A DNA stretch of 64,000 nucleotides. It comes from Ophelia neglecta. Taxonomy: Eukaryota. The notes beneath the pieces were generated by a model that was not told the DNA's origin, ran no database searches, and was given only the letters and a program-made list of their open reading frames with translations. Made by a program: the position numbers and the translations under genes. This document shows, in pieces, positions 35,767 to 55,083 of the stretch (positions are counted from its first letter, which is position 1; every line of letters starts with the position of its first letter). The stretch covers positions 10,106,001 to 10,170,000 of the forward strand of contig OZ260667.1 of NCBI GenBank assembly GCA_965285935.1, written 5' to 3'.

Positions 35767-35898
35767 TCAGAGAAGCATCGCCTCCCTCATGCAGTGGGCC
35801 ATGAATTTGAAGAGCATTGCCCATGCTTCTTCTACTTCCGGGTTCCAATGATTCTTAAGTACAGGCTCTATGGCAAACAAGAACTGTTGTCCCAGAAT
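35767..35898 (-). CDS. Globin coding exon 3 (G/H helices, stop)
   Basis: Acceptor TTGTTATTTCAG|ATT. Translates as ILGQQFLFAIEPVLKNHWNPEVEEAWAMLFKFMAHCMREAMLL*. Too short to appear in the ORF track. Confidence 0.92.
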   Translation of the reverse strand: MLGQQFLFAIEPVLKNHWNPEVEEAWAMLFKFMAHCMREAMLL

Positions 35899-38800
35899 CT
35901 GAAATAACAAAATACTTGTTAAGTATTTCCTCTTAGGCACAAAATATTAAGATGTTATCTACGATCGATATTGCAAACTCACACCCCCTTACTGTACGTA
36001 TCTGTAAAGTCATTCACTGGCGGTAGACATGTACTAGATAGGAAGTTCCCCGGTTATATTTTTAAAAAAATCTACTCCATTCTTCTATCCTATAAGAATA
36101 TATTATAAATGATTTTCTGATTTCCACACAAAAATGAAATGGCACTCGGAAATGTTAAATAAAAATACATAGTTGTTACGACTAACTGCGTGAGATAAGG
36201 TTTAATGATCACAAACCAGTCGTCTTTACATATAAGGAGAAGATTAATAACATATTTTGTTAAAATCAGCCTAAATAATTTATTAGTCAGGAACTAGTTC
36301 TTCTTAAGCAAGCAATGCAGTACGAAATCATTAAAGACAGCGCAAATCCGACAATGCTCTAGTTATTGAATGTATAACATTAACGTCTAAAGTCCATTAG
36401 ATTAAGCTATGCAATGTAATTTTGGTTATTTGTTGTTTTTTCCTGATGTGGAACTAGAAGCAGCTTACGTCGAGATATTCCACCTTGGCATTGAATATGA
36501 TGTGTTTGCGGCCCAACTCATGCAATGCCCTGACTGCTTTATCTGGGTCATGCCGCAGGTCCACCAACATCTCTACTGTGTGAAAGACTCGTTTGCCATG
36601 CGCGCGCAGCTCTTGGCTATACCGGGTATCCTCCGATGATAGGTTTTTGAATGGTCCAAATGCACCCTTTACATCTGGGTAGGTCTCAAATAATCTACAA
36701 AACACAACGATGCCAAAGAACCGTGAAGTGATTAATTCGTGTAAATGGGACATTTTGTCAGTAAACAAATCCAGGTGATATTTAAAGTTAATAATTGAAA
36801 TATCTTTTGAATACACTGGCCTTTGACTGAGTACAATATTTCAATTGGCACGTATCCGTACATTGACTAAAAGAAAGAGAGATTAAACAATTTCTTCAAA
36901 TACAGGTACCTTAAGTATGTTCATCTAACATATGTCCACTTATACGGTTTGAATTTGCCTTAGGCCTAAATAAAACTAATTTAAATTTCGTACTTATTTA
37001 GGTCTTCTTGGAAATGATCCCGGCATTAAATGGGTGGATTAACTACGAAGTAATGTATGCCAAAATATTTAGCCATCGGACTAATCATATTCCACGCACG
37101 TATGATGTACGGACACGCTTACACACACAACTTACTGCAAAATGGTCGCCTGCCTGGCATAGACAGACCATCGCAATTATTGGGGATTGAGGTAGGGGAT
37201 TTTTCATTAAGAAATTAATCGGCAACTTTCAGAGAAAAGGCTGTTTTCTGCTCTAGAAATGTTTGTTTTGGCCAAAGTTGAAAAAAAAACAAATTTATGT
37301 TTATAAATGAAGTTTTTTTAAGTTTTTTTTTCGAAAGGAATCTTGTACTTTTTTTTATAAATAATTAATGGATTAGTCTTGAACATCGGGTTTGGTTTAT
37401 CTGCCTAGTGTCTATTCCAGTATAAGTAGTAATGGTTCACCGTCAAGTCCTGGTTGTATGTAGACAATCTGTGCTTTATCTAATGGCAGAGCCATCGGTG
37501 CATTCAGAGCTTACCTGCCTTTTAATCCTTATGTTCTGCAATCTACCAAAATTGCGTTATAGATTGCCGCGCTTTCTTGCAATTAATTATTATCGCTTAA
37601 TTTATTGTAAATTGATGGGGTAGGCGAAAACGGAAGGAACGTACTTTTGTTATTTGGCTAAACATGGAAACTAACGTGTCCAAAACTTGGGGTTTCCTGA
37701 CCAGTCGTTTTACGTTAAAATCTATATTGCGCACCAAAGATGATAATTGCTTTCCTTCGTCCAATGCATCATTAGTGAAATTAAAGCTCTTAAGCAAATA
37801 AGATCAGCCCGAAAGCGCTAAATCGGTCAAAGCGGAGGTAATTGAGACATTAGTGACATGAAACACTAAGCAAATAGTCCTGGCTGTTATTACCTATGTT
37901 GTTAGAGGCAAATTTTTGTGTATAGAAACTTCCGTCACATATATAAATTATTATAAGACGTTCAGGATTGGCCGTTCGCTATGATAATTATCAACCACGG
38001 CCATTACAAGAACGAATTTTCAGGGGAATAGATATTATTTCTTTTACCGGTTTATCACGTTAGCCAAACCTCATCAAACGTTGGTAACCGGAAGGTAGAC
38101 GGGAAGTGCTAACATCGCCAGTCTATGTCGTTTCTGGGATTGCATACAGTCAGGATATAAGATGGATGTCATACGACACCCACTATAGTCTCGGTCTGTC
38201 GTATTGGAGAAATAAAAGACGAGTGACTCAAAAGCAGAGAAATCTAATTACCCACATCGCGTATCTTTCTTTTAATTTGATATTTTGCAGCACTCTAAAG
38301 GACCGTCTCCTTCTTTATAATCCCACGCGTGTCCTTGCCTGGATACAAGTTCCAACAATCCTTATTAATAATGTAGCAAATGCCACAGTAAACGAGTTTA
38401 CCTCAAACACATCGCTGAGAGTGGCTAAACCCTATAAAAAAATCAGTAATGTATAATATTTATTATCCTTATTAAATATCGCAATCTCTTCAATGATCAG
38501 TATAATGATCTGGTCATGATTAACGCACCTGTGCCTTCTCGGTCGTTGAAAATACTCTACTGTGACAAGAAGCGTGCCTTTTTGCCTGGTATTCATTGCA
38601 TGCGCAGAGGAAATTGACAAAGCAAACAACTAACAGCAAAACATCTGTTCGTTGGCCAAATCACACATCTGTATTAATACTGGTGCGACAAAAAGAATGA
38701 GGCAGCAAAACAACGGACGTGACCAAGAGAAACATTGGACATTTATTTCTTAAGCCACGTGAAAGGAATTGGCAAAAGGGAATGAGTACCGAAAGAAATT

Positions 38801-41800
38801 GTCCTTCCGACAAGCCGACAAACACACTAAGAGCGTAGCAGGACAACAGAGCAGCCCATTTCTTAATATGTAAAACTTTAGCCAATAAAATAACAATAAA
38901 AAAATATAAAGGCAGCTCAGATAATTCTTCACTCTATGATTTGTCCATCTCTTCCATCTGCGAGATTCAATCTCGCTTGGCAGATAATAGCTGTAATTAT
39001 TGTTGGGAAAAACCGGTATGATTCACAAATGGAGAGTGCAGCACCGTGAGCAGGAATTCTCTAAAGAGTCCGCAGAAGAAGGTAGGCAATTCTAAGCAAA
39101 GGGGCAGTTGGTTTCTACAGACGTAAAATAGCACAACCACAATTGATTCCCTCGAATAAGACGGGCATTGATACCAGGCAGAAAGAAGTGTTTGTAACAA
39201 GCAAACTCCATACTATTATGGTACAGGAAGCAATTGACAAATATTTGTAGGGGAGGCTGCTGTTTAATTTCCAAGAGTTATCTTTCAAAAGAGGCTTAGG
39301 TTTAACCGATTTTATCTGCCATTGGAATAATTTTGTTATTTAACTGAATAATTTGCAATTTAGTGAAGGGCAGGCGGCTTTGCAAGGTTCTAACCGGTTT
39401 TTATAATTTCTTTATGTCAGTCAATATTATCCCAAATAGATTATTAGGTTGGATTCTACTGAACTTCATCTTGCATTACTTATATAGCCCTTATGATGTA
39501 TGTAGACTGATTTACTTTGTTAGAAAGGTTCTCTTTCGCTTACTTACACAATAGCCTACATGCATGGGTTTCAACGCGTAAATTTGTGCATCGCAGACAA
39601 TCGTATGCACAAAATAAGTGATAGCCCATACAGAAGCCGTGAAAGCTGTAATAAAGGGTCGGTCATCTAAGCAGTCTACAAATAAAATTATAGAGGTCAC
39701 AAAATACCAGGAAGAGTACGAAAAGGTCGAGCAATATACCATGAAAGTCTTTTCTATGTGGACGAACAGGCCTCATGAAATCCTACTTGTCTGGGTTGAT
39801 AAGTTCATTATGTTGGTACGCCCGCAGCGGTCGGTAATAACAATTGGCTTAAGTACGCAGGTGCTTCAATAAAGCAATTGCATTGCCCTGTAGATTAATC
39901 TGAGGTTTGGTTTTGCCGAAGACGATATGTTGACGCTGACATGTACTTTGACGAGGAGTCTAGCTGTGGCCAGCAAGCGGAGGGAGGGGGGGGGGGGGTA
40001 AAAGGGGCTTTTAAAGGGCAATGGTTTCCATTTTACCTTGATTGTAAAAGGTTGATAGCCGAAAACTTCTGTTTACGAAAGAAATGACCTGCCTGTGAGT
40101 TTATGTGTTTGTTCACGTCATATATTACATATATTTTCCGAGAACTATAACTATAAATATCTTTCTCAGTCAAATGATGGATTGTTTAGGAATCGTACTC
40201 AATAGTATGTATCGCCATTTACTCTCCGGAGTTCTAGGAATGCAGCCATATATATTATATTCACCGACATTGAATCCGTCGTCTGCCGTCGTCTCTTGGG
40301 AAATTTGGCAGCCATGGCTACAGAGTGAAATTGGACAATAACGGATTAAAAATTATATAAAGACGGATCTTTAGGAAAATTGTAAATTTCAGAAGCATAT
40401 ATATAAAAGAATAAAAGTCAGGTGCATAATAGGACGTTCAAGCAACATATTATTGAAAACAACACCAGTCAAGATGCCGGTAGGATCGACCGGCTAATTT
40501 CTATGTGTTTTAGAAGACAGTGGTATCTGACTATATGAGCCCTACATATACCAATATGGTCAGATATTATCGGACAGATCCAAGAAATGCTGTGTGCAGG
40601 AAGCTCTGGCCGATAACACTCAAAAGCACTGGTTGTCAAGTGACTTCACCAAAGTCATATGACCAGTCACCTCCCAAGAGCGGACAATGGTGCAGATGAA
40701 AATGGCGTGGCGTAGTGGCGGTAGATTTCTACAAAGCCAAGATAAGGTTACAAAAGTGTCAGAGCAGACTTTCATGGTAGTTGCTGGTCAGACTGGTCAG
40801 AATGTTTTATATATGCATCTCGTTAATCTTCTTTTTGCAGTTTTGAGTAGGCCTATTGGTTTCTTGTTTGCCGTTTACAAAGGAATCTGTCTGATAACCA
40901 CAAATCCGATCATTGTTATGCTGCCTCAAGGAACAACATAAGCCCAGAATAGCTAACCATATATGGTAGTGTCGCATGCATTCCGACCAAGGCCACATAG
41001 AGCTACTGGGTTAGGCGTTGTCCTGCTGCGTAAGAAAAGGTAAATTACTGCAGGTGCTTAGTTATTAGTATTTTACGGATACAAACATCGTTAAATTGTC
41101 TTGTAAGTTGCTTTTGTTAGGATTTATTGTCGTTTTCCGGTAAAAGATATGTTGGACAAGATTGAATTTATTTGTGGTTGTCATAACTAATCGTGCGACC
41201 CCAGCAAGATATCTTAAGAATGCCAATGTTTGTGAACACACATTATTATTCACAGAGTCGAAGAAGGCTTTTAAAACTATGTGTCTGTGCTTGAGGTGTT
41301 CAAGAATCAAACTCAACCACTGACAAGCTGGGACATTTCCAGAACTATGTGTAGTCCATTCTCTTTATCAGAGTTGTAAATATTGGCGTCTAGTTCAGGC
41401 CCCGAGTAAGGTTTACCTTAGCGTCATATGTGCAATTACCTACGGGTAAGACGCCGCGGTTTTGTCGCGATTTAGCCGCGTGTTTTTGCGACCGGCACTT
41501 GACGTTGTGCAGTACAAGGAAGATAACCCACATCCCATGAGGGCAGTGTAGTAAGAATCTGGAAGGCAGCCACATTAAAGCGAATAATCTTAAAACAAAT
41601 TTAGAATGCAACTTATCAACATAAATTAAGCATCTTTTTCAAATATCAACTGGCGCCTTTGCATTCGAAGCAACGTTAATGTCAATTTGATAAAACTTCC
41701 ATCTTAATTCCATTAACATAATGGCATAAACAACATAGCACAATTCCTCAAGATATTAAATTGGAAAGCATAAAACAAATCTAGCGCATGTTTTCCGAAA

Positions 41801-42969
41801 AGTGATTTTTTTTTTACTTTTTATTTGAAGGACATTCTAGTGTTAATTAAAAGTCTGCACCCTTGCACAACGAATAAAAGGGCAGAATATTCTGCAGTAG
41901 GGCAAAAGAACATACCATGTGTCTTGTAAAATGGCCAAAATAACTGATGTAGGTTAGACATTAGGATTAAGGCATTGGCGTGCAAGAGAGCAAATAATTC
42001 TATTTGGCAATGGGTATAACAAACTGTTGAACCGTTTTTTTTTATTCACTGCCTATTTTTTTACGGATGACAACGACGCACCTCAGGATGAGAGAGGCAA
42101 ACGCTAACAACATCGGCCAGGTCTTGAGAGCAGGTAATTATACGATAAGATCCATTAAATAAAACATTGACTTGTGACTTAGTTCAGATTTATGGGAGTG
42201 ACAGCATCACATTTGTTCGACTATAACACAATTCAAAAGCGACATTGAATACCCGACAGAAAAAGCATATTCATAAATAGTCTATTAAATCGATACCTCC
42301 AAGAACCACTAGCCACTGGCCAACATATATCAATCCTCAGTTCCCAGCAGTAAATAAATATAGAACGCAATTAAAAAAACCCTGAAACGTCAGTCATAAA
42401 AGATTGCCAGAGCTTTAAAGAAAATCTACATAAAACGACAGTATAGACCATCACGATTTGTCCAATCTAGGTATAACGCGATATTTCAAATGTTTAAAGC
42501 AAACATCTGATTAGCTCTATTTGGTGGTGATATCTTACCTTGTAAACAATTCGAGTCCCAGACGGCTGATGTCGCTTTGAATGACTGCCCATGTATCCAC
42601 CACGATGGCCAGCTGGCGGTCACTAAGACACGGCCGATTGGCTCTAAGCTGCTCCAGCTCCTGGTGTCTGATGTCCAGGGTGGTGGGCAGTCCATCGTCC
42701 ACCAGCCTCTTCCTTTTGAAGGGCTGGAGGAAGTTACCACAGGGTGTGCCGTGCTTGGGGCTGCGACTAGGAGTGGTCGCTTTAGGGGAGCTTGAGCCCG
42801 GAACCCACTGCTCCATGGGTTCATGGAGAGGCGAGATGGGATAAGCCGAGGCCCGCAGGGAGGAGGGTATGTTCCGGGAGGATAGGAAGTCCCGTGGGGG
42901 GCCAGGGCGGCCGCCCCGCCCGCCGTCGTCCATTGGGTGAAGCCCTTGGGTGGACTCGCCTGCGCCCAT
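35767..42969 (-). CDS. Spliced globin gene (neuroglobin/globin-X-like, putatively N-myristoylated), join(complement 42539..42969, 36469..36694, 35767..35898), 262 aa
   Basis: Three exons (431+226+132 = 789 nt) join in frame with canonical GT/AG sites. The product has globin helices A-H: LSDRQLAIVVDTW (A), GLELFTRLFETYP (B/C), Phe CD1 (F156), distal His E7 (ELRAHGKRV, H176), proximal His F8 (LGRKH, H208), and G/H helices ILGQQFLFAIEPVL..WNPEVEEAW. Introns fall at the conserved globin positions B12.2 and G7.0. Confidence 0.93.
36469..36694 (-). CDS. Globin coding exon 2 (B-G helices, heme pocket)
   Basis: Acceptor TTTTGTAG|A, donor GAC|GTAAGC. Encodes LFETYPDVKGAFGPF...LRAHGKRV...LHELGRKH...VEYLD. 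Confidence 0.95.
40450..41400 (+). mobile_element. Highly decayed LINE RT fragment in globin intron 1 (antisense to the gene)
   Basis: Ordered remnants: QYG (~40553), GVVAVDFYKA-DKV (~40710-40750), MLPQGTT (~40920), and LNLFVVVITN (~41165, like K-LLGV-IS). Possibly CR1/Zenon-like. Confidence 0.45.
42539..42969 (-). CDS. Globin coding exon 1 (N-terminal extension plus A/B helices)
   Basis: ORF MGAGES...LGLELFT-R ends at donor AG|GTAAGA (phase 2, B12.2). An in-frame TAA 60 nt upstream (43030-43032) fixes this ATG as the N-terminus. Confidence 0.9.
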
Positions 42970-43050
42970 AACTGGGCAGGAATTAAGACTGCTGAACGTT
43001 TCCCGGGCAAAAGTTATATCACAGATAGTTTACGGCGTAATAATACCTCC

Positions 43051-43360
43051 CCTGTAAAGTAAAAAGTAGTACCTCTGTGAGTTATAAGCACAGGTATAAC
43101 ATACATGGGTCAGATTCAACGCTCTGAGCTTGTGAAACAACCAACTAGACGCGCGATGAGGCTCAATGACAACTGTCCGTGGAGAGTTTAACCGAGGACT
43201 GGTAGGGTGAGCCGCAACAGAGCCTAGCCTAAAACACCATCGGACCAGCCGCCTCGCGCTCGCTGCCTCGCCGTCTCGCTCTCCGGCTCTCTCTTTCCGC
43301 ATCCCTCTCGCTTCCTTGCGCTTTCCGCCTCAATCATTGGCGCTATAATGTGGGGGTACC
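43051..43360 (-). promoter_or_regulatory. GC/CpG-rich putative promoter / 5'UTR region of the globin gene
   Basis: Local CpG- and purine-rich tract (43240-43330) immediately upstream of the ATG, with CCAAT at ~43335-43339 on the minus strand. A strong acceptor-like TTTTTACTTTACAG ends at 43052, so a 5'UTR intron is an alternative reading. Confidence 0.4.
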
Positions 43361-44783
43361 AAGGTACGCTGAAACAGGATATCCTCCTTCTCTCACTGCA
43401 TAATATTTCTCTGACTTTGTCTACGTCGGTGTTTAAGAGCTAACCTAGATTTTTAGACCTTTTTGAAAAGGCCAACATCGGATCTTGGCCTGCAAAGTGT
43501 GGCACAACTTCCTATGCATCTATTTTCACCATTGTACTCACACTATTTTATGATACCTGGTGATGACTGGGCGGGGGGAGGCCTTTTTGATAGTAAACAT
43601 CGCAATGTTTAAGTAATTTAGTTTGAAAAGGATAATATGAGAAGTGCTTACAAAACTAGCATTTTTATTTTTTGCAGTTTAATGAACTAATGAACCATAT
43701 ACGGTGCTTTGGATGAATAGTCTCGTAAACTGATAACTGAGAGATAAGATGATTTATTAGACGATTAGACAATTTATTATATGCTAGATTAGCCGATGCC
43801 CGAGAGATGGAACGATAACTGAGAGATTAATTGAATTATTCGTTCCGTTTTAAAATTAATACCTTTTAGTGGGTGTTAGGTAGCATCGTCTCGTATTTAC
43901 ATTATTCAAGCGATATGTGCAAGAATAAATGTGATCCTTTTTGTTTTTCACAGAACGGTGTCGCATTATTTAAAAGTATGATTTGACCTAGAGAAACTAC
44001 TTGTCATATTGACGAACGCCTATATGACCTTTATGACGTTTATGATTTTGGAAGTCCCTGTATGCCTCGCGATCTTTTCAACGTTAAAAACCATTATGGG
44101 GTTCTTCGCTTAAATTTATTCCCAATTAAGGTGATGAACGAGGCAAAGCATGATGTATAAATTCTGAATTGGCTAAAGTCTTCAGTTTTCATAGGTTTAA
44201 CGCCAACAAAAGAACGCACTATGAGTTGAACGTGTACTCGTTATAGAGATAACAGTGTCGGGTTCAGTGCTCTTAGATAACTTGGAGCTCTTCACACTGT
44301 CATAGAAATTGCTTCCTCCTCATTTCCTCTGGGTATGTTATGGCGTCTTTCTTATTTATGATTAGTTTGCGATTGAAGTGGCTTGGCTGCCTCCCCCCGT
44401 CTTGGGTCGAGGCTAGTTATTTACTCACCTTAGGAAAGCCTCCGTCATTAAATATATGCATTGTGTTACTAATAGAAATAAGTGGGATAGCTATCTAGAG
44501 CGGTTCATGGACACTGGCCATAGACATATGGTGTTCAAACACCATTGTACCGACTTTTTTGTATCTATTTTAGGCATTAAGCATTCTGCCTACGCGGAAT
44601 TAGCTGTCTTACGCCGGAATCTCAAAATGCGCGAAAAATCTCAACCTTACCCTATATTTTAGTCACATTTCCGTCCATTAAACCAAGAAAACCAGACTGA
44701 GAAGCAGGCTATACACGAATAGACTTGAAAATAGTCTATAGAGGATAGCGTAGTCCTTAGGTTTTACCATTTCCCTTAATATA

Positions 44784-51531: not shown

Positions 51532-54500
51532 ATGAATTTTTCCGTTTATTGGATGAATTCAATACAATTGCCAAACAAGCAAAAGGAATTAACTATCCCT
51601 GATGTCTCGGACCTGCTTTACTGGAATGGGACTAAAACACACAGCCTGACGATCTTGTACAGGTCAGTCGGTGCCGGCGGGCCCAAGTATGTTGCCAAAG
51701 GCACTGTAAGCAGTACTAGAAGAAAAGTTCTGTACTTAGCAGCCATACTACTTGCACATGACACAGAATTAAACCCTGGTCCTGGTAAGAGAAACTACAA
51801 ATACCCCTGTGGCTCTTGTGCCAGGCCAGTAAAAATAAATGACAAAGGTGTATGTTGTGACAATTCTTTATGTCAAACATGGTACCATATCAAATGCCAC
51901 AATATTGGTGATTCAACATATGAACATCTAGGTCATAGTAATGTCTCATGGTATTGCACCAATTGCGGGGCTACTAATTATAGCCCCACACCACCAAACC
52001 CAGGTGACATCTCCACACCAAACTCTTTCAACTTACTGAGCGACTATAGCTCGTCCCCTCTGCACGCGGGAGATATCTCCACACCAAGGTCTCTGAACTT
52101 GCTGAGTGATTTGCACTCACCACGTCACAATGAACTAGATGCACACTCAACCCCAATATCACCTGGCCCACCTGTTGCTTCTTCCTCTCCTATAACTTGG
52201 GGTAACAAAAAAGACCCTAATGTCAGATATACTAGCAAGACTATCAGACTTCTTAATATTAACTGTCAATCACTTAGGGACAAGAAAGCCGAATTCCAAC
52301 ATATTGTCGATGACTCTGACCCTGACATTATAGTAGCCACTGAGACATGGCTAAAAGAAAACATATCTGATGGTGAAATTGGCCAAACAAATAAATTTAG
52401 CACTGGTTACAAAATCTACAGGAAGGACAGAGCTGATGGCTATGGAGGTGTACTTATCGCAGTTAAATGTCACCTTACTAGCACTAGAGCATTGGAATTT
52501 GAAACTGAAGGGGAAATAGTCTGGGTAAAGGTTGATTTGTATGGCTCCAAAACACTTTATGTTTGTGGATGCTATAGACCCCATACAGGGGACATATCTG
52601 GACACGAGGCAATTATGAGGTCCATAAGTAGAGCACCTCAGTGCACTAACTCCCATATTTGGATTGCAGGTGACCTAAATTACCCAGGTCTTGACTGGCA
52701 GTCCAATACAGTTAAATCAGGCTGCAACTATGCAACCATACATCAAGAATTTCTTGACTTTCTGAGTGATAATAGCTTAGCCCAGTTAGTTAGAGAACCA
52801 ACTAGAGGACAAAATATACTAGATTTATTCATAACAAACAACCCTACTCTTGTAAATCAAGTATCTGTTGGACCTGGAGTAGCAGACCACAGCAAGGTCC
52901 TTGCTGAAATAAATGTTAAACCCATCACCCTGGAACAGGAACGAAGGGAAATATACCTTTACAACAAAACAAACTGGCAGCCCATGAGGGATGACCTACT
53001 AAATGCTCTTAATACTTTAGACACAGAAACTCTCACAATAGATCAGATATGGACAACACTAAAAAACAACATTGAGATATGTATCAAGAAATATGTACCA
53101 CACAAACTAGCTAGAAAGAAAAACAGTCTACCCTGGCTATCAGCAAATACCAGAAGAATCCCGAAAAAGAAGTATAAACTTCACAGTCGTAAGAAAAAGA
53201 GTGGCAAACCTGAACATATTACTCACTTCAAATCAGTCAGTGCCCTAGCCCAAAAAATGATCAGGCAGGACTACTGGCAATATGTCAACCAGCTGGTGTC
53301 TCCCGCAGAAGGAGAGACCAAACTGGTGAGCACAAAGAAATTTTGGACTTTCATTAAGCACTGTAAAAATGACACTACCGGTGTGGCACCATTAGAGGAT
53401 GAAACTGGTACAGTTCACTCCGATGGCGCAACCAGGCAAACATACTAAATAGGCAATTTAGTTCTGTATTCTCTAAACCTGCACCACTGAGCCTGAAGCA
53501 GAGCTGTTTGCGAAATACACCTGCACACCTAATTCCAACTAGCATGCAGTCCCCCCATCCTGACCTTATTGACTTCGACATAGGCCTGGAAGGGGTGCAT
53601 AAACTACTACAAAACCTGAGGCCACATAAGGCGGCGGGACCAGATGGACTCAGACCTCTGATCCTCCAACAACTGGGGAGTGTCATTGCTCCCACTCTCC
53701 AAATTATTTTCCAGAGATCTCCGAGTGAGGGTAAACTGCCTGAGGATTGGCGTCATGCTAATGTTGTTCCCATCTTTAAGAAAGGCCCTAAACATGCACC
53801 TGCTAATTACAGGCCTGTCTCTCTCACATGTATATGCAGCAAATTAATGGAGCATATTATCTCCAGCCAGGTTAGGAAACACCTAGACTCCGATAATATC
53901 TTATCTCCCTTTCAGCACGGATTCCGCTCTAGGAGATCCTGTGAAACCCAGCTTATCGAATTTGTCCAAGACCTACATACGACCTGTGAAAAAGGTCGAT
54001 ACACTGAAGGAATCATCATGGATTTCAGTAAGGCCTTTGATAAGGTCTCACACCACAAATTGCTATTTAAACTAAACTGGTATGGTATTAGAGGCCAGAC
54101 TCTTGATTGGATTGGTGACTTTCTGGCAGATAGGAAGCAGCGAGTAGCCCTGGACGGAATTTTCTCGGACACGTGTAGTGTCACTTCAGGCGTCCCACAG
54201 GGTTCGGTCCTTGGACCAATCTTGTTTCTAATATACTAATGACCTTCCTGACTGTGTATCATCCAATACCCGGCTATTTGCTGATGATACCATAATATAC
54301 AGAGAAATTAACACTGTCCAAGACACAATTACCCTACAAAGGGATCTGACTAAACTTGAAAACTGGTCAAACCTTTGGCAAATGGAATTCCACCCTAAAA
54401 AATGTGCTGTCCTTAAAATTGGCCGGAAAAGGACACAATTCAACTCCACTTACATACTTTACAATCAAGCCCTGGAACAAGTAGACACCGCTAAATACCT

Positions 54501-55083
54501 CGGCATTACCCTCTCCTCTGACCTCTCTTGGAACACACACATTAACAATATTTCTAACAAAGCCAACCAAACACTCGGATTTCTCAAACGGAACTTAAAA
54601 ATTCATTCTCCTGACATTAAAGCTAAAGCCTATATGGGTCTGGTTCGTCCAAAGATGGAGTACGCGGCAGCAGTGTGGGACCCCCATACAGCAAACAATA
54701 TATACAAACTTGAGCAGGTCCAGCGCAGGGCAGCCCGCTGGACACTCAACCGTTTCCACAACACCTCTAGCGTCACCTCCATGTTATGTCAACTGGAGTG
54801 GCCAACCTTACAACAACGTAGATACACAGCCAGACTCACCATGATGTACAAAATGGTGTACAGTACTGTAGGTGTCAACCCCTATCAATATTTACAACCT
54901 ATCTCTAGACCCACTAGATTCTCACATCCTCTAACTTTCCTTCAGCCACATTGTTCAACCACCGCTTATAGCATGTCCTTTTTCCCCAGGACAGCAATTC
55001 AGTGGAATGCGTTGCCCCAGAGCACAGTCCAGGCACCCTCTGTAGAGGCATTTAGGTGCCAGCTACTGGGGCTTCACAACTAA
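51532..55083 (+). pseudogene. LINE PHD-endonuclease-reverse transcriptase ORF, split by two frameshifts
   Basis: Track ORFs 51532-53448, 53508-54239 and 54382-55083 are consecutive parts of one ORF. There is a 1-nt loss at ~53434 (DGAT-K-ANILNRQFSSVF) and a 2-nt loss at ~54237 (FLIY-I-NDLPDCVSSNTRLFADDT). Confidence 0.88.
51718..51783 (+). other. 2A-like (StopGo) ribosomal-skipping peptide in the LINE ORF
   Basis: RRKVLYLAAILLAHDTELNPG|P: a hydrophobic helix followed by D-x-E-x-NPGP (codons 51760-51783), directly upstream of the PHD finger. Confidence 0.7.

What the first reader, a model, noticed from the sequence alone, without database searches (positions are those of the whole stretch)
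42628..42969. Putative membrane-anchored globin with a long disordered N-terminal arm and myristoyl-only anchor
Seen: the protein starts MGAGES (Gly2 + Ser6), and an in-frame stop 60 nt upstream shows this is the real start. About 114 Pro/Ser/Gly/Arg-rich residues precede the A helix. Known: MGxxxS is the N-myristoyltransferase consensus, and globin X and several invertebrate globins are acylated and membrane-bound, typically with a palmitoylated Cys near position 3. Here Cys3 is absent. Inference: a lipid-anchored globin held on a long flexible tether, more suited to redox/NO/O2 sensing or signalling than to O2 transport, and possibly only weakly or reversibly membrane-bound.
Basis: partly seen in the sequence, partly recalled or inferred. 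Interest (0 to 1): 0.75.

Follow-up and report, generated by a model that had tools for sequence, protein, structure and literature searches.

The report
Lipid-anchor-type globin gene, known kind
This is an intact three-exon animal globin gene whose protein starts with a conserved fatty-acid attachment signal and carries a long N-terminal arm, an ordinary new member of the already described group of probably membrane-tethered globins.

Summary
On the minus strand an ORF starts MGAGES at 42969, and about 114 Pro/Gly/Ser/Arg-rich residues precede helix A. The gene has three exons (42969-42539, 36694-36469, 35898-35767). Its two introns lie at the canonical globin positions, and the model is 262 aa.

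The upstream in-frame TAA (43032-43030) is heterozygous TAA/TAC in the sequenced sample. A stop in genomic DNA also does not exclude splicing.

The start is better supported by an ancient paralog on another contig. It has the same exon structure and starts MGSGDST. It has no other Met before helix B, and no DNA similarity was detected upstream of the ATG.

The arm is not uniform. It has an acylation motif, an indel-rich linker (residues 21-58) and a module (59-114) as constrained as the globin core. That module holds four S/T-P sites, KRKR and two conserved Cys.

Among 28 relatives with intact helix A/B, 23 start MG and only 8 have Cys3. Their arms run from 26 to 144 aa. Myristoyl-only, long-armed globins are in print for arthropods and C. 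elegans.

Verdict: a new member of a known kind.

The scan also noted another lipid-anchored (MGC) globin elsewhere in this genome.

The parts
42539..42969 (-). Exon 1 coding part: 143 codons plus 2 nt. It starts at the ATG at 42969 and ends at the donor AG|gtaaga (phase 2, the canonical B12.2-type position).
   Evidence: The paralog has its donor at the same place.
42910..42969 (-). Residues 1-20, MGAGESTQGLHPMDDGGRGG. This is the N-myristoylation-type motif (Gly2, Ser6, Thr7). Kozak context is G at -3 and G at +4.
   Evidence: 10/20 residues are identical to the paralog (MGSGDSTLGIEHLDHSGRGA), with synonymous changes at G2, S6, G9, G17, R18 and G19.
42796..42909 (-). Residues 21-58, a variable, indel-rich linker.
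   Evidence: Against the paralog, 7/17 alignable residues are identical, 21 columns are gaps and pN is 0.49. Charge-hydropathy places residues 1-58 barely on the disordered side (0.415 against a boundary of 0.419).
42628..42795 (-). Residues 59-114, a conserved pre-A module. It holds SPKA, TPSR, SPKH and TPCG sites, Cys77, KRKR, and TTLDIRHQELEQLRANRPC.
   Evidence: 47/56 residues are identical to the paralog and pN is 0.094. The last ~25 residues align with Capitella P0005 and P0009.
42706..42717 (-). KRKR basic cluster, residues 85-88. It could be a second membrane signal or an NLS-like motif.
   Evidence: The paralog has KRKK. Capitella P0005 has KKR plus further basic residues at the equivalent place.
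36695..42538 (-). Intron 1 (5844 nt).
   Evidence: Even DNA depth across the part that was laid (38500-42538) shows that the runs are genomic.
36469..36694 (-). Exon 2 (226 nt): the last base of the Arg codon plus 75 codons, LFETYPDVKGAF...AKVEYLD. It holds Phe CD1, His E7 and His F8. The donor GAC|gtaagc is phase 0, the G7.0-type position. No central intron.
35899..36468 (-). Intron 2 (570 nt).
35767..35898 (-). Exon 3 coding part: 43 codons ILGQQFLF...MREAMLL plus TGA.
   Evidence: (Pfam Globin, E 0.014). It is 42/43 identical to the paralog.
43030..43032 (-). Upstream in-frame TAA, heterozygous TAA/TAC in the sequenced sample.
   Evidence: (table 3, place 43030).
43033..43302 (-). Upstream 90-codon ORF in the same frame as the globin. 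It is not conserved and is probably 5' leader or promoter.
   Evidence: tblastn against the paralog locus gave only a 17-aa match at E 3.6. blastn found no similarity upstream of the ATG.

Best explanation
This is a functional, heme-binding single-domain globin gene of a spiralian-type (probably annelid) genome. It belongs to the broad assemblage of N-terminally acylated 'globin X / X-like' animal globins.

Translation starts at the ATG at 42969. After Met removal, Gly2 is co-translationally myristoylated by N-myristoyltransferase (inferred). There is no nearby Cys for palmitoylation, so stable membrane binding would need a second signal.

The N-terminal extension has three parts:
- an acyl motif (residues 1-20);
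- a variable linker (residues 21-58);
- a strongly constrained module (residues 59-114) with four Ser/Thr-Pro sites, a KRKR cluster, two conserved Cys and a conserved segment directly before helix A.

The likely working mode is a globin held at a membrane surface by myristate plus the basic cluster. It would act in redox/ROS/NO chemistry rather than O2 transport (inferred from relatives). Shown here: gene structure, globin identity, conservation of the start and motif, and the constraint pattern. Inferred: acylation, location and function.
For: - Globin identity: Pfam PF00042 E 8.6e-15 on exon 2 and E 0.014 on exon 3. The best solved relatives are cytoglobin (E 7e-8) and a nerve hemoglobin, with His E7, His F8 and Phe CD1 aligned.
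- Start codon: a paralog on contig C8 has identical splice positions and starts MGSGDST. Its only Met before helix B is M1, and a TGA lies 27 nt upstream in frame. M13 and M52 of the window copy are not conserved. blastn found no similarity upstream of the ATG.
- Selection: synonymous sites between the paralogs are saturated (pS 0.75-0.85). Even so, residues 1-20 are 10/20 identical and residues 59-114 are 47/56 identical (pN 0.094, against 0.098 for exon 2).
- Motif across relatives: of the 150 best of 156 hits to exon 2, 28 are single-domain with helix A/B intact. Of these 28, 23 start MG, 21 fit the recalled PROSITE pattern and 8 have Cys3. Arms among the MG-starting ones are 26-144 aa.
- Nearest full-length relatives: Capitella teleta R7URJ5 (242 aa, MGTEISS, no Cys3, ~94-aa arm) and R7TLW3.
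- Precedents (passages read): zebrafish GbX is membrane-bound through acylation (PMC3176823). Arthropod GbX mostly keep myristoylation only and have long N-extensions (PMC7457136). Song et al. mention myristoylation combined with a basic motif (PMC7771090).
Against: - No RNA run holds the locus, so the transcription start, splicing and expression are unproven.
- One allele removes the upstream stop and opens the frame to an ATG at 43302. AG dinucleotides after pyrimidine-rich stretches lie just upstream of the ATG, so an upstream exon cannot be formally excluded for the window copy.
- The motif test is a weak pattern that I recalled. The dedicated predictors (NMT predictor, Myristoylator) could not be run.
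- In zebrafish GbX the myristoyl-only C3S mutant showed no membrane association and sat in the nucleus (PMC3176823).
- KRKR lies 84 residues from the acyl group, unlike the classical N-terminal polybasic signals.
- The disorder estimate is only a charge-hydropathy proxy and is borderline for residues 1-58.
Confidence: 0.75

Rival explanations
1. Myristate plus the KRKR motif target the globin to the nuclear envelope or nucleus rather than the plasma membrane. KRKR would act as a classical nuclear localisation signal, as proposed for C. elegans GLB-26.
For: KRKR (KRKK in the paralog) fits the recalled monopartite K-K/R-x-K/R pattern and is conserved. GLB-26 is myristoylated, has a predicted NLS and sits in the nuclear lamina, and its G2A form is nucleoplasmic (PMC3520999, passages). 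The myristoyl-only zebrafish GbX C3S mutant was exclusively nuclear (PMC3176823).
Against: No NLS predictor was run. GFP fusions of small proteins enter nuclei passively: GFP alone was also nuclear. Capitella P0009 lacks a basic run.
Confidence: 0.15
2. The real N-terminus is different, either an upstream exon or ATG or a downstream Met. The MG motif would then be internal or absent and the protein would not be acylated.
For: There is no transcript evidence. The upstream stop is polymorphic, and on the TAC allele an in-frame ATG at 43302 becomes continuous with the globin frame. Acceptor-like AGs lie just upstream of the ATG.
Against: The paralog starts with the same M-G-x-G-x-S-T and has its own in-frame TGA 27 nt upstream. 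It has no Met between M1 and helix B. The upstream 90-codon ORF has no counterpart at the paralog locus. 23 of 28 relatives start MG. Both copies have a good Kozak context.
Confidence: 0.07
3. The locus is a decaying or unexpressed duplicate, so the features have no present function.
For: No RNA run was found.
Against: All three exons are open, with consensus splice sites, in both copies. Non-synonymous divergence is low against saturated synonymous divergence (pN 0.01-0.10 in residues 59-143 and exons 2-3). The only listed coding variant in exon 1 (42586) is synonymous by my reading, but 68 further differences were not shown.
Confidence: 0.03

Closest known systems
Capitella teleta globins R7URJ5 (ELU06021.1, 242 aa) and R7TLW3 (ELT94512.1, 210 aa)
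   Same: They are the nearest full-length relatives: 52% and 49% identity over exon 2 and the same clade in the exon-2 tree. They start MG and lack Cys3. Their arms are ~94 and ~62 aa. They share the conserved pre-A segment (..L.IR...L.QL...RP.L) and the C-terminus MKE.MVL. R7URJ5 also has S/T-P sites followed by a basic cluster.
   Different: The middle of the arm is not alignable. R7URJ5 has Cys10, and R7TLW3 has no basic run. Neither has Cys77 or Cys114. Both are database predictions labelled 'hypothetical protein'.
Vertebrate globin X (zebrafish GbX; the turtle relative P0139)
   Same: An N-terminal extension that starts MG with a myristoylation motif, on a globin core related at E ~1e-4. 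Membrane binding through acylation has been shown experimentally (PMC3176823).
   Different: GbX has Cys3 palmitoylation, which its membrane binding requires, and a shorter arm (48 aa in P0139). It has an E10.2 intron (PMC7457136), which is absent here. In the exon-2 tree it falls in another group.
Arthropod GbX and GbX-like globins
   Same: Most arthropod GbX keep myristoylation but have lost palmitoylation, and they carry long unexplained N-terminal extensions (PMC7457136). Hits P0053, P0054, P0059 and P0074 start MG without Cys3 and have arms of 59-144 aa. GbXL has only the B12.2 and G7.0 introns, as here.
   Different: They fall in a different clade of the exon-2 tree. The arm sequences are unrelated.
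C. elegans GLB-26
   Same: A myristoyl-only globin with a basic NLS-type motif. Its G2A mutant changes location, and a redox-sensing role has been proposed (PMC3520999, abstract and passages).
   Different: A nematode-specific lineage. It was not among the hits that I looked up by name, and no homology of the arm was shown.

Membership tests
Globin (Pfam PF00042) | Profile match above the curated cut-off | tested here: met
   The exon-2 ORF scores 55.7 bits against a cut-off of 22, E 8.6e-15. Exon 3 scores 16.3 bits, E 0.014, below the cut-off on its own.
Globin (Pfam PF00042) | Heme-pocket residues: proximal His F8, distal His E7 and Phe CD1 | tested here: met
   In the phmmer alignment to cytoglobin 1umo, the His of the query's RAHGKRV and the His of GRKH align with the cytoglobin His residues, and AF aligns with YF. 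The helix labels are recalled.
Globin (Pfam PF00042) | Canonical introns at B12.2 (phase 2) and G7.0 (phase 0) | tested here: met
   The splice sites were read directly and lie at identical places in the paralog. The position names come from alignment and from PMC7771090 and PMC7457136.
N-myristoyltransferase substrates | Gly at position 2 of the true N-terminus | tested here: inconclusive
   Gly2 follows the ATG at 42969. The start is supported by the paralog and by relatives, but there is no transcript evidence.
N-myristoyltransferase substrates | Sequence context G-{EDRKHPFYW}-x-x-[STAGCN]-{P} (PROSITE-type pattern, recalled) | tested here: met
   The window copy, the paralog, P0005 and P0009 all match. 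This is a weak pattern.
N-myristoyltransferase substrates | A positive call by dedicated predictors, and actual myristate attachment | not testable with these tools
   The NMT predictor and Myristoylator are not available here. Attachment needs labelling or mass spectrometry.
Globin X sensu stricto (clade III of Song et al.) | Central intron at E10.2 | tested here: not met
   Exon 2 runs uninterrupted from the B12.2 position to the G7.0 position. The criterion is from PMC7457136.
Globin X sensu stricto (clade III of Song et al.) | Dual acylation: Gly2 plus Cys3 | tested here: not met
   Residue 3 is Ala (Ser in the paralog). The first Cys is at 77.
Globin X sensu stricto (clade III of Song et al.) | Grouping with vertebrate GbX in a tree | tested here: not met
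   In the exon-2 tree (75 columns, 92 rows) the window copy groups with its paralog (SH-aLRT 94) inside a 21-row group with the Capitella proteins (support 86). The turtle GbX sits elsewhere. Resolution is low.
Globin X-like (clade II), clade IV or Sp-globin of Song et al. 2020 | Grouping with named reference members such as Pdu-gb-II, Pdu-gb-IV or Pdu-Sp-gb | not testable with these tools
   No named reference sequences were at hand. Clade membership of the Capitella globins is in additional files that were not opened. The clade-mates that I looked up carry no taxon names.

The most novel reading that the evidence does not exclude
The conserved pre-A module may be a regulated switch rather than a tether. 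It holds four Ser/Thr-Pro sites next to KRKR, and two conserved Cys. Phosphorylation or thiol oxidation beside the basic cluster would toggle a myristoyl-electrostatic (MARCKS-like) membrane contact, or unmask an NLS. The globin would then shuttle between a membrane and the nucleus or nuclear envelope, coupling heme redox, NO or O2 state to signalling. If so, this spiralian globin subfamily would be a distinct sensor class, retained as two ancient paralogs here.
Probability: 0.15. Interest if true: 0.5.

Novelty: new member of a known kind. Interest (0 to 1): 0.28.

Why it matters
N-terminally acylated globins are thought to reflect an old, non-respiratory, membrane-linked globin function that is still poorly understood. 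This locus adds a well-defined spiralian example with two ancient paralogs.

The paralog comparison splits the long N-terminal extension into a hypervariable linker and a module as constrained as the globin fold. That gives concrete mutagenesis targets (G2A, the KRKR cluster, the S/T-P sites, Cys77 and Cys114) for asking what the 'unexplained' long extensions of GbX-type globins do.

It does not change the current picture. Myristoyl-only globins and long N-terminal arms are both already in print.

Tried and rejected
- Word search with exon 1: 70 candidates, none scored at E <= 0.01. Word search with exon 2: no candidate at all. Neither found close orthologues in the length windows those queries allow (90-287 aa and 70-224 aa).
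- Pfam on exon 1 alone: 0 families at E <= 10.
- RNA evidence: no RNA run is listed. The three holders come from one DNA sample. Laying them showed even depth over intron and flanks, so they are genomic. They gave only polymorphism data.
- The bacterial-type promoter/terminator scan of 42900-43700 is irrelevant for an animal gene and was discarded.
- The ESM Atlas lookup of the Capitella homologue gave only 'globin' by features (best 0.92) and no structural match above TM 0.33.
- Naming the clade-mates: 10 fragments looked up, and none carries a taxon name. The clade name in Song et al. therefore stays open.
- Neuroglobin membership was considered and dropped. Database labels such as 'neuroglobin-like' on mollusc relatives are automatic names. 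The best solved relatives are cytoglobin and a nerve hemoglobin. I recall the neuroglobin central intron, and no central intron is present here.
- The pseudogene reading was rejected on open frames and low pN.
- The 78-nt similarity at 74% between intron 1 of the two paralogs (window about 42299-42375) coincides with contig breaks at 42303 and 42335 (table 7). I read it as a dispersed repeat, not a conserved regulatory element. This was not tested further.
- Blank and Burmester 2012 (Mol Biol Evol) is not held. What I say of it comes from citations in PMC7771090 and PMC7457136.
- Supplementary files were not opened. The additional files of PMC7771090 (clade lists and acylation predictions, including Capitella) could settle the clade name.
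Full report
**What is there**

The flagged stretch, 42628-42969, is the first 114 codons of a minus-strand ORF, 42535..42969. The ORF reads MGAGESTQGLHPMDDGGRGG.... Its last ~29 residues, LSDRQLAIVVDTWAVIQSDISRLGLELFT, look like globin helices A and B. The frame then meets a consensus donor (ACA AG|gtaaga) after 42539.

A stop-to-stop scan of the minus strand found the rest of the gene:
- Exon 2 is 36694-36469. Its acceptor is ttgtag|A. It encodes LFETYPDVKGAFGPF...HGKRV...GRKH...AKVEYLD and ends at the donor GAC|gtaagc.
- Exon 3 is 35898-35767. Its acceptor is tttcag|ATT. It encodes ILGQQFLF...MREAMLL followed by TGA.

Counting codons exon by exon gives 143 + 1 + 75 + 43 = 262 residues. Every search was made exon by exon, and the joined model was never written or searched.

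**Globin identity**

- Pfam PF00042 matches the exon-2 ORF at E 8.6e-15 (55.7 bits, cut-off 22) and exon 3 at E 0.014. Exon 1 alone matches nothing.
- Among solved structures the best relatives of exon 2 are cytoglobin (E 7e-8) and a nerve hemoglobin, 8oup (E 2.2e-7).
- The alignment places the query's His in RAHGKRV and in GRKH on the distal and proximal His of cytoglobin, and a Phe on the CD1 position. The helix labels are recalled.
- The two introns are phase 2 and phase 0. They lie at the positions that the literature calls B12.2 and G7.0 (PMC7771090; PMC7457136). There is no central intron.

**The genome**

The window is contig C12:10106001-10170000 of a 762-Mb assembly in 223 contigs. 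The assembly holds at least 50 globin-exon matches. The nearest named relatives are annelid and mollusc proteins. A spiralian host, probably an annelid, is an inference.

**Is M1 the start?**

That stop is real in the window, but the argument is weak for two reasons.
- The only public runs that hold the locus are three DNA runs of one sample. Their contigs carry T>G at + strand 43030, which makes the codon TAC. The depths are 21.5 of 37.4, 13.6 of 24.2 and 10.6 of 10.6. On that allele the frame stays open to a TGA at 43332 and includes an ATG at 43302.
- A genomic stop cannot exclude an upstream exon.

The better evidence is a paralog. Searching the window's own genome with exon 1 found a second copy on contig C8, with 81% identity over residues 54-143.
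- Its exon-1 ORF reads MGSGDSTLGIEHLDHSGRGAGPSR....
- Its exons 2 and 3 are 83% and 98% identical to the window's.
- All of its splice sites are in the same places.
- M1 is its only Met before helix B, so the window's M13 and M52 are not conserved.
- It has its own in-frame TGA 27 nt upstream.
- blastn finds no similarity upstream of the ATG.
- The window's upstream 90-codon ORF has no counterpart there; the best tblastn match is 17 aa at E 3.6.
- Both ATGs have G at -3 and G at +4.

I take M1 as the start with about 90% confidence. Transcript proof is missing: no RNA run was found.

**Anatomy of the arm**

Between the paralogs, synonymous sites are saturated (pS 0.75-0.85). Amino-acid conservation therefore reflects selection.

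| Segment | Identical residues | pN | Note |
|---|---|---|---|
| Residues 1-20 | 10/20 | 0.28 | M-G-x-G-x-S-T kept; synonymous changes at G2, S6, G9, G17, R18, G19 |
| Residues 21-58 | 7/17 alignable | 0.49 | 21 gap columns |
| Residues 59-114 | 47/56 | 0.094 | about as constrained as exon 2 |
| Residues 115-143 | 24/29 | 0.082 | helices A and B |
| Exon 2 | 62/75 | 0.098 | globin core |
| Exon 3 | 42/43 | 0.010 | globin core |

The constrained module (59-114) contains SPKA, TPSR, SPKH and TPCG, Cys77, KRKR (KRKK in the paralog), and TTLDIRHQELEQLRANRPC directly before helix A. Its last part aligns with the Capitella relatives. An R-P-x-[LF]-[ST] motif before helix A also recurs in the mollusc relatives.

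A charge-hydropathy proxy puts the whole arm on the disordered side, but only barely for residues 1-58 (0.415 against a boundary of 0.419). So 'a long disordered arm' is half right: half of it is a conserved module of unknown structure.

**Relatives and the acylation motif**

The word search found no close orthologues for exon 1 or exon 2. I therefore ran the exhaustive search once, with exon 2. It gave 156 proteins at E <= 0.001, and the best 150 were listed.

Among those 150, 28 met all three of my criteria: a single domain, an initial Met, and a helix A/B signature (W-x10-G) directly upstream of the exon-2 match. The other 122 rows were left out of that count. They are multi-domain proteins, exon-sized fragments or mis-spliced predictions.

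Of the 28:
- 23 start MG;
- 21 fit the PROSITE-type myristoylation pattern (recalled);
- 8 have Cys3;
- 9 start MG with no Cys in the first 12 residues.

The 5 that do not start MG are P0016, P0050, P0062, P0129 and P0134. Arms of the MG-starting ones range from 26 to 144 aa, so the window's 114 aa is long but not the longest.

The nearest full-length proteins are Capitella teleta R7URJ5 (242 aa, MGTEISS) and R7TLW3 (210 aa, MGNTSSH). An exon-2-only tree (92 rows, 75 columns, low resolution) joins the window copy to its paralog (SH-aLRT 94). The pair sits inside a 21-row group (support 86) with the three Capitella proteins. That group is apart from the groups that hold arthropod GbX-type proteins, the turtle GbX and the mollusc 'neuroglobin-like' proteins.

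**What is known**

All of the following rests on passages that I read.
- Zebrafish globin X is membrane-bound through Gly2 myristoylation and Cys3 palmitoylation. Its C3S mutant, which has myristate only, was exclusively nuclear with no membrane association (PMC3176823).
- Most arthropod GbX have lost palmitoylation but kept myristoylation. Their N-terminal extensions are long and 'unexplained'. GbX carries an E10.2 intron that GbX-like lacks. A myristoylated crab hemoglobin binds membrane (PMC7457136).
- Song et al. report many predicted acylated globins in their clades II, III, IV and Sp-gb. They note that more of them may bind membranes by myristoylation combined with a basic motif (PMC7771090).
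- C. elegans GLB-26 is myristoylated, has a predicted NLS and sits at the nuclear lamina. Its G2A form is nucleoplasmic (PMC3520999).

**Membership**

The gene is a globin. It is not globin X in the strict sense: it has no E10.2 intron, no Cys3, and does not group with vertebrate GbX. Whether it belongs to clade II (X-like), clade IV or the spiralian Sp-globins of Song et al. could not be decided. No named reference sequences were available, the clade lists are in supplements that I did not open, and the clade-mates that I looked up have no taxon names.

**Mechanism**

The most likely reading has these steps, and only the gene-level evidence behind them is shown.
1. Met is removed and Gly2 is myristoylated co-translationally.
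2. Myristate alone binds membranes weakly, so binding is probably helped by the conserved basic cluster or by a partner.
3. The heme domain then works at a membrane surface in redox, ROS or NO chemistry, as proposed for GbX.

The main rival, at about 15%, is nuclear-envelope or nuclear targeting through myristate plus a KRKR NLS, as in GLB-26. My most novel reading is that the S/T-P sites and Cys residues next to KRKR form a regulated switch. Nothing here tests it.

**Verdict**

This is a new member of a known kind. The useful additions are the paralog-based proof of the start, the three-part dissection of the arm, and the finding that the upstream stop is polymorphic.

The scan's earlier notes list another predicted lipid-anchored (MGC) globin elsewhere in this genome (s1-747452). 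I did not check it.

Noticed in passing
window 51532-55083 (+): A non-LTR retrotransposon. The 638-aa ORF carries a PHD finger and endonuclease domains (Exo_endo_phos_2, E 2.9e-9). The next ORF carries a reverse transcriptase (RVT_1, E 8.5e-24). The third ORF (54382-55080) has no Pfam match.
   Followed up: partly
G000:C8:79974324-79983985 (L002 1499-1866 minus; L003 4324-5152 minus): An intact ancient paralog of the globin gene, with the same three exons and splice sites. Its arm is 21 residues shorter, intron 1 is 8464 nt and intron 2 is 475 nt.
   Followed up: yes
L002 459-1276: A 43-bp tandem repeat, 19 copies at 88% matches, inside intron 1 of the paralog. It creates long spurious ORFs on the opposite strand. 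Further 30-123-bp repeats lie upstream of the paralog's exon 1, at L002 2206-2673.
   Followed up: partly
window 40300-40499 and 42299-42375: Intron 1 shows a depth spike (127-184 against ~25) and a 131-nt joint at 40400/40532 in all three DNA runs. A 78-nt stretch shares 74% identity with the paralog's intron 1, and contigs break there at 42303 and 42335. Both look like dispersed repeats.
   Followed up: no
window 42970-43540: Allelic differences are dense just upstream of the ATG. There are substitutions at 42980, 42990, 43009 and 43030, a 6-nt insertion at 43304, and more. Within the 431-nt coding exon 1 only one difference is listed (42586, synonymous). 68 further differences were not shown, so the contrast is only suggestive.
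   Followed up: partly
G000, several contigs: At least 50 globin-exon matches genome-wide. There are clusters on C7 3.02-3.23 Mb (13 matches, 12 of them covering nearly the whole domain in one open frame, which suggests intronless copies), on C8 25.36-25.52 Mb, on C9 13.86-13.94 Mb and on C5 53.89-53.90 Mb. The scan also noted an MGC-type lipid-anchored globin elsewhere in the genome (s1-747452).
   Followed up: no
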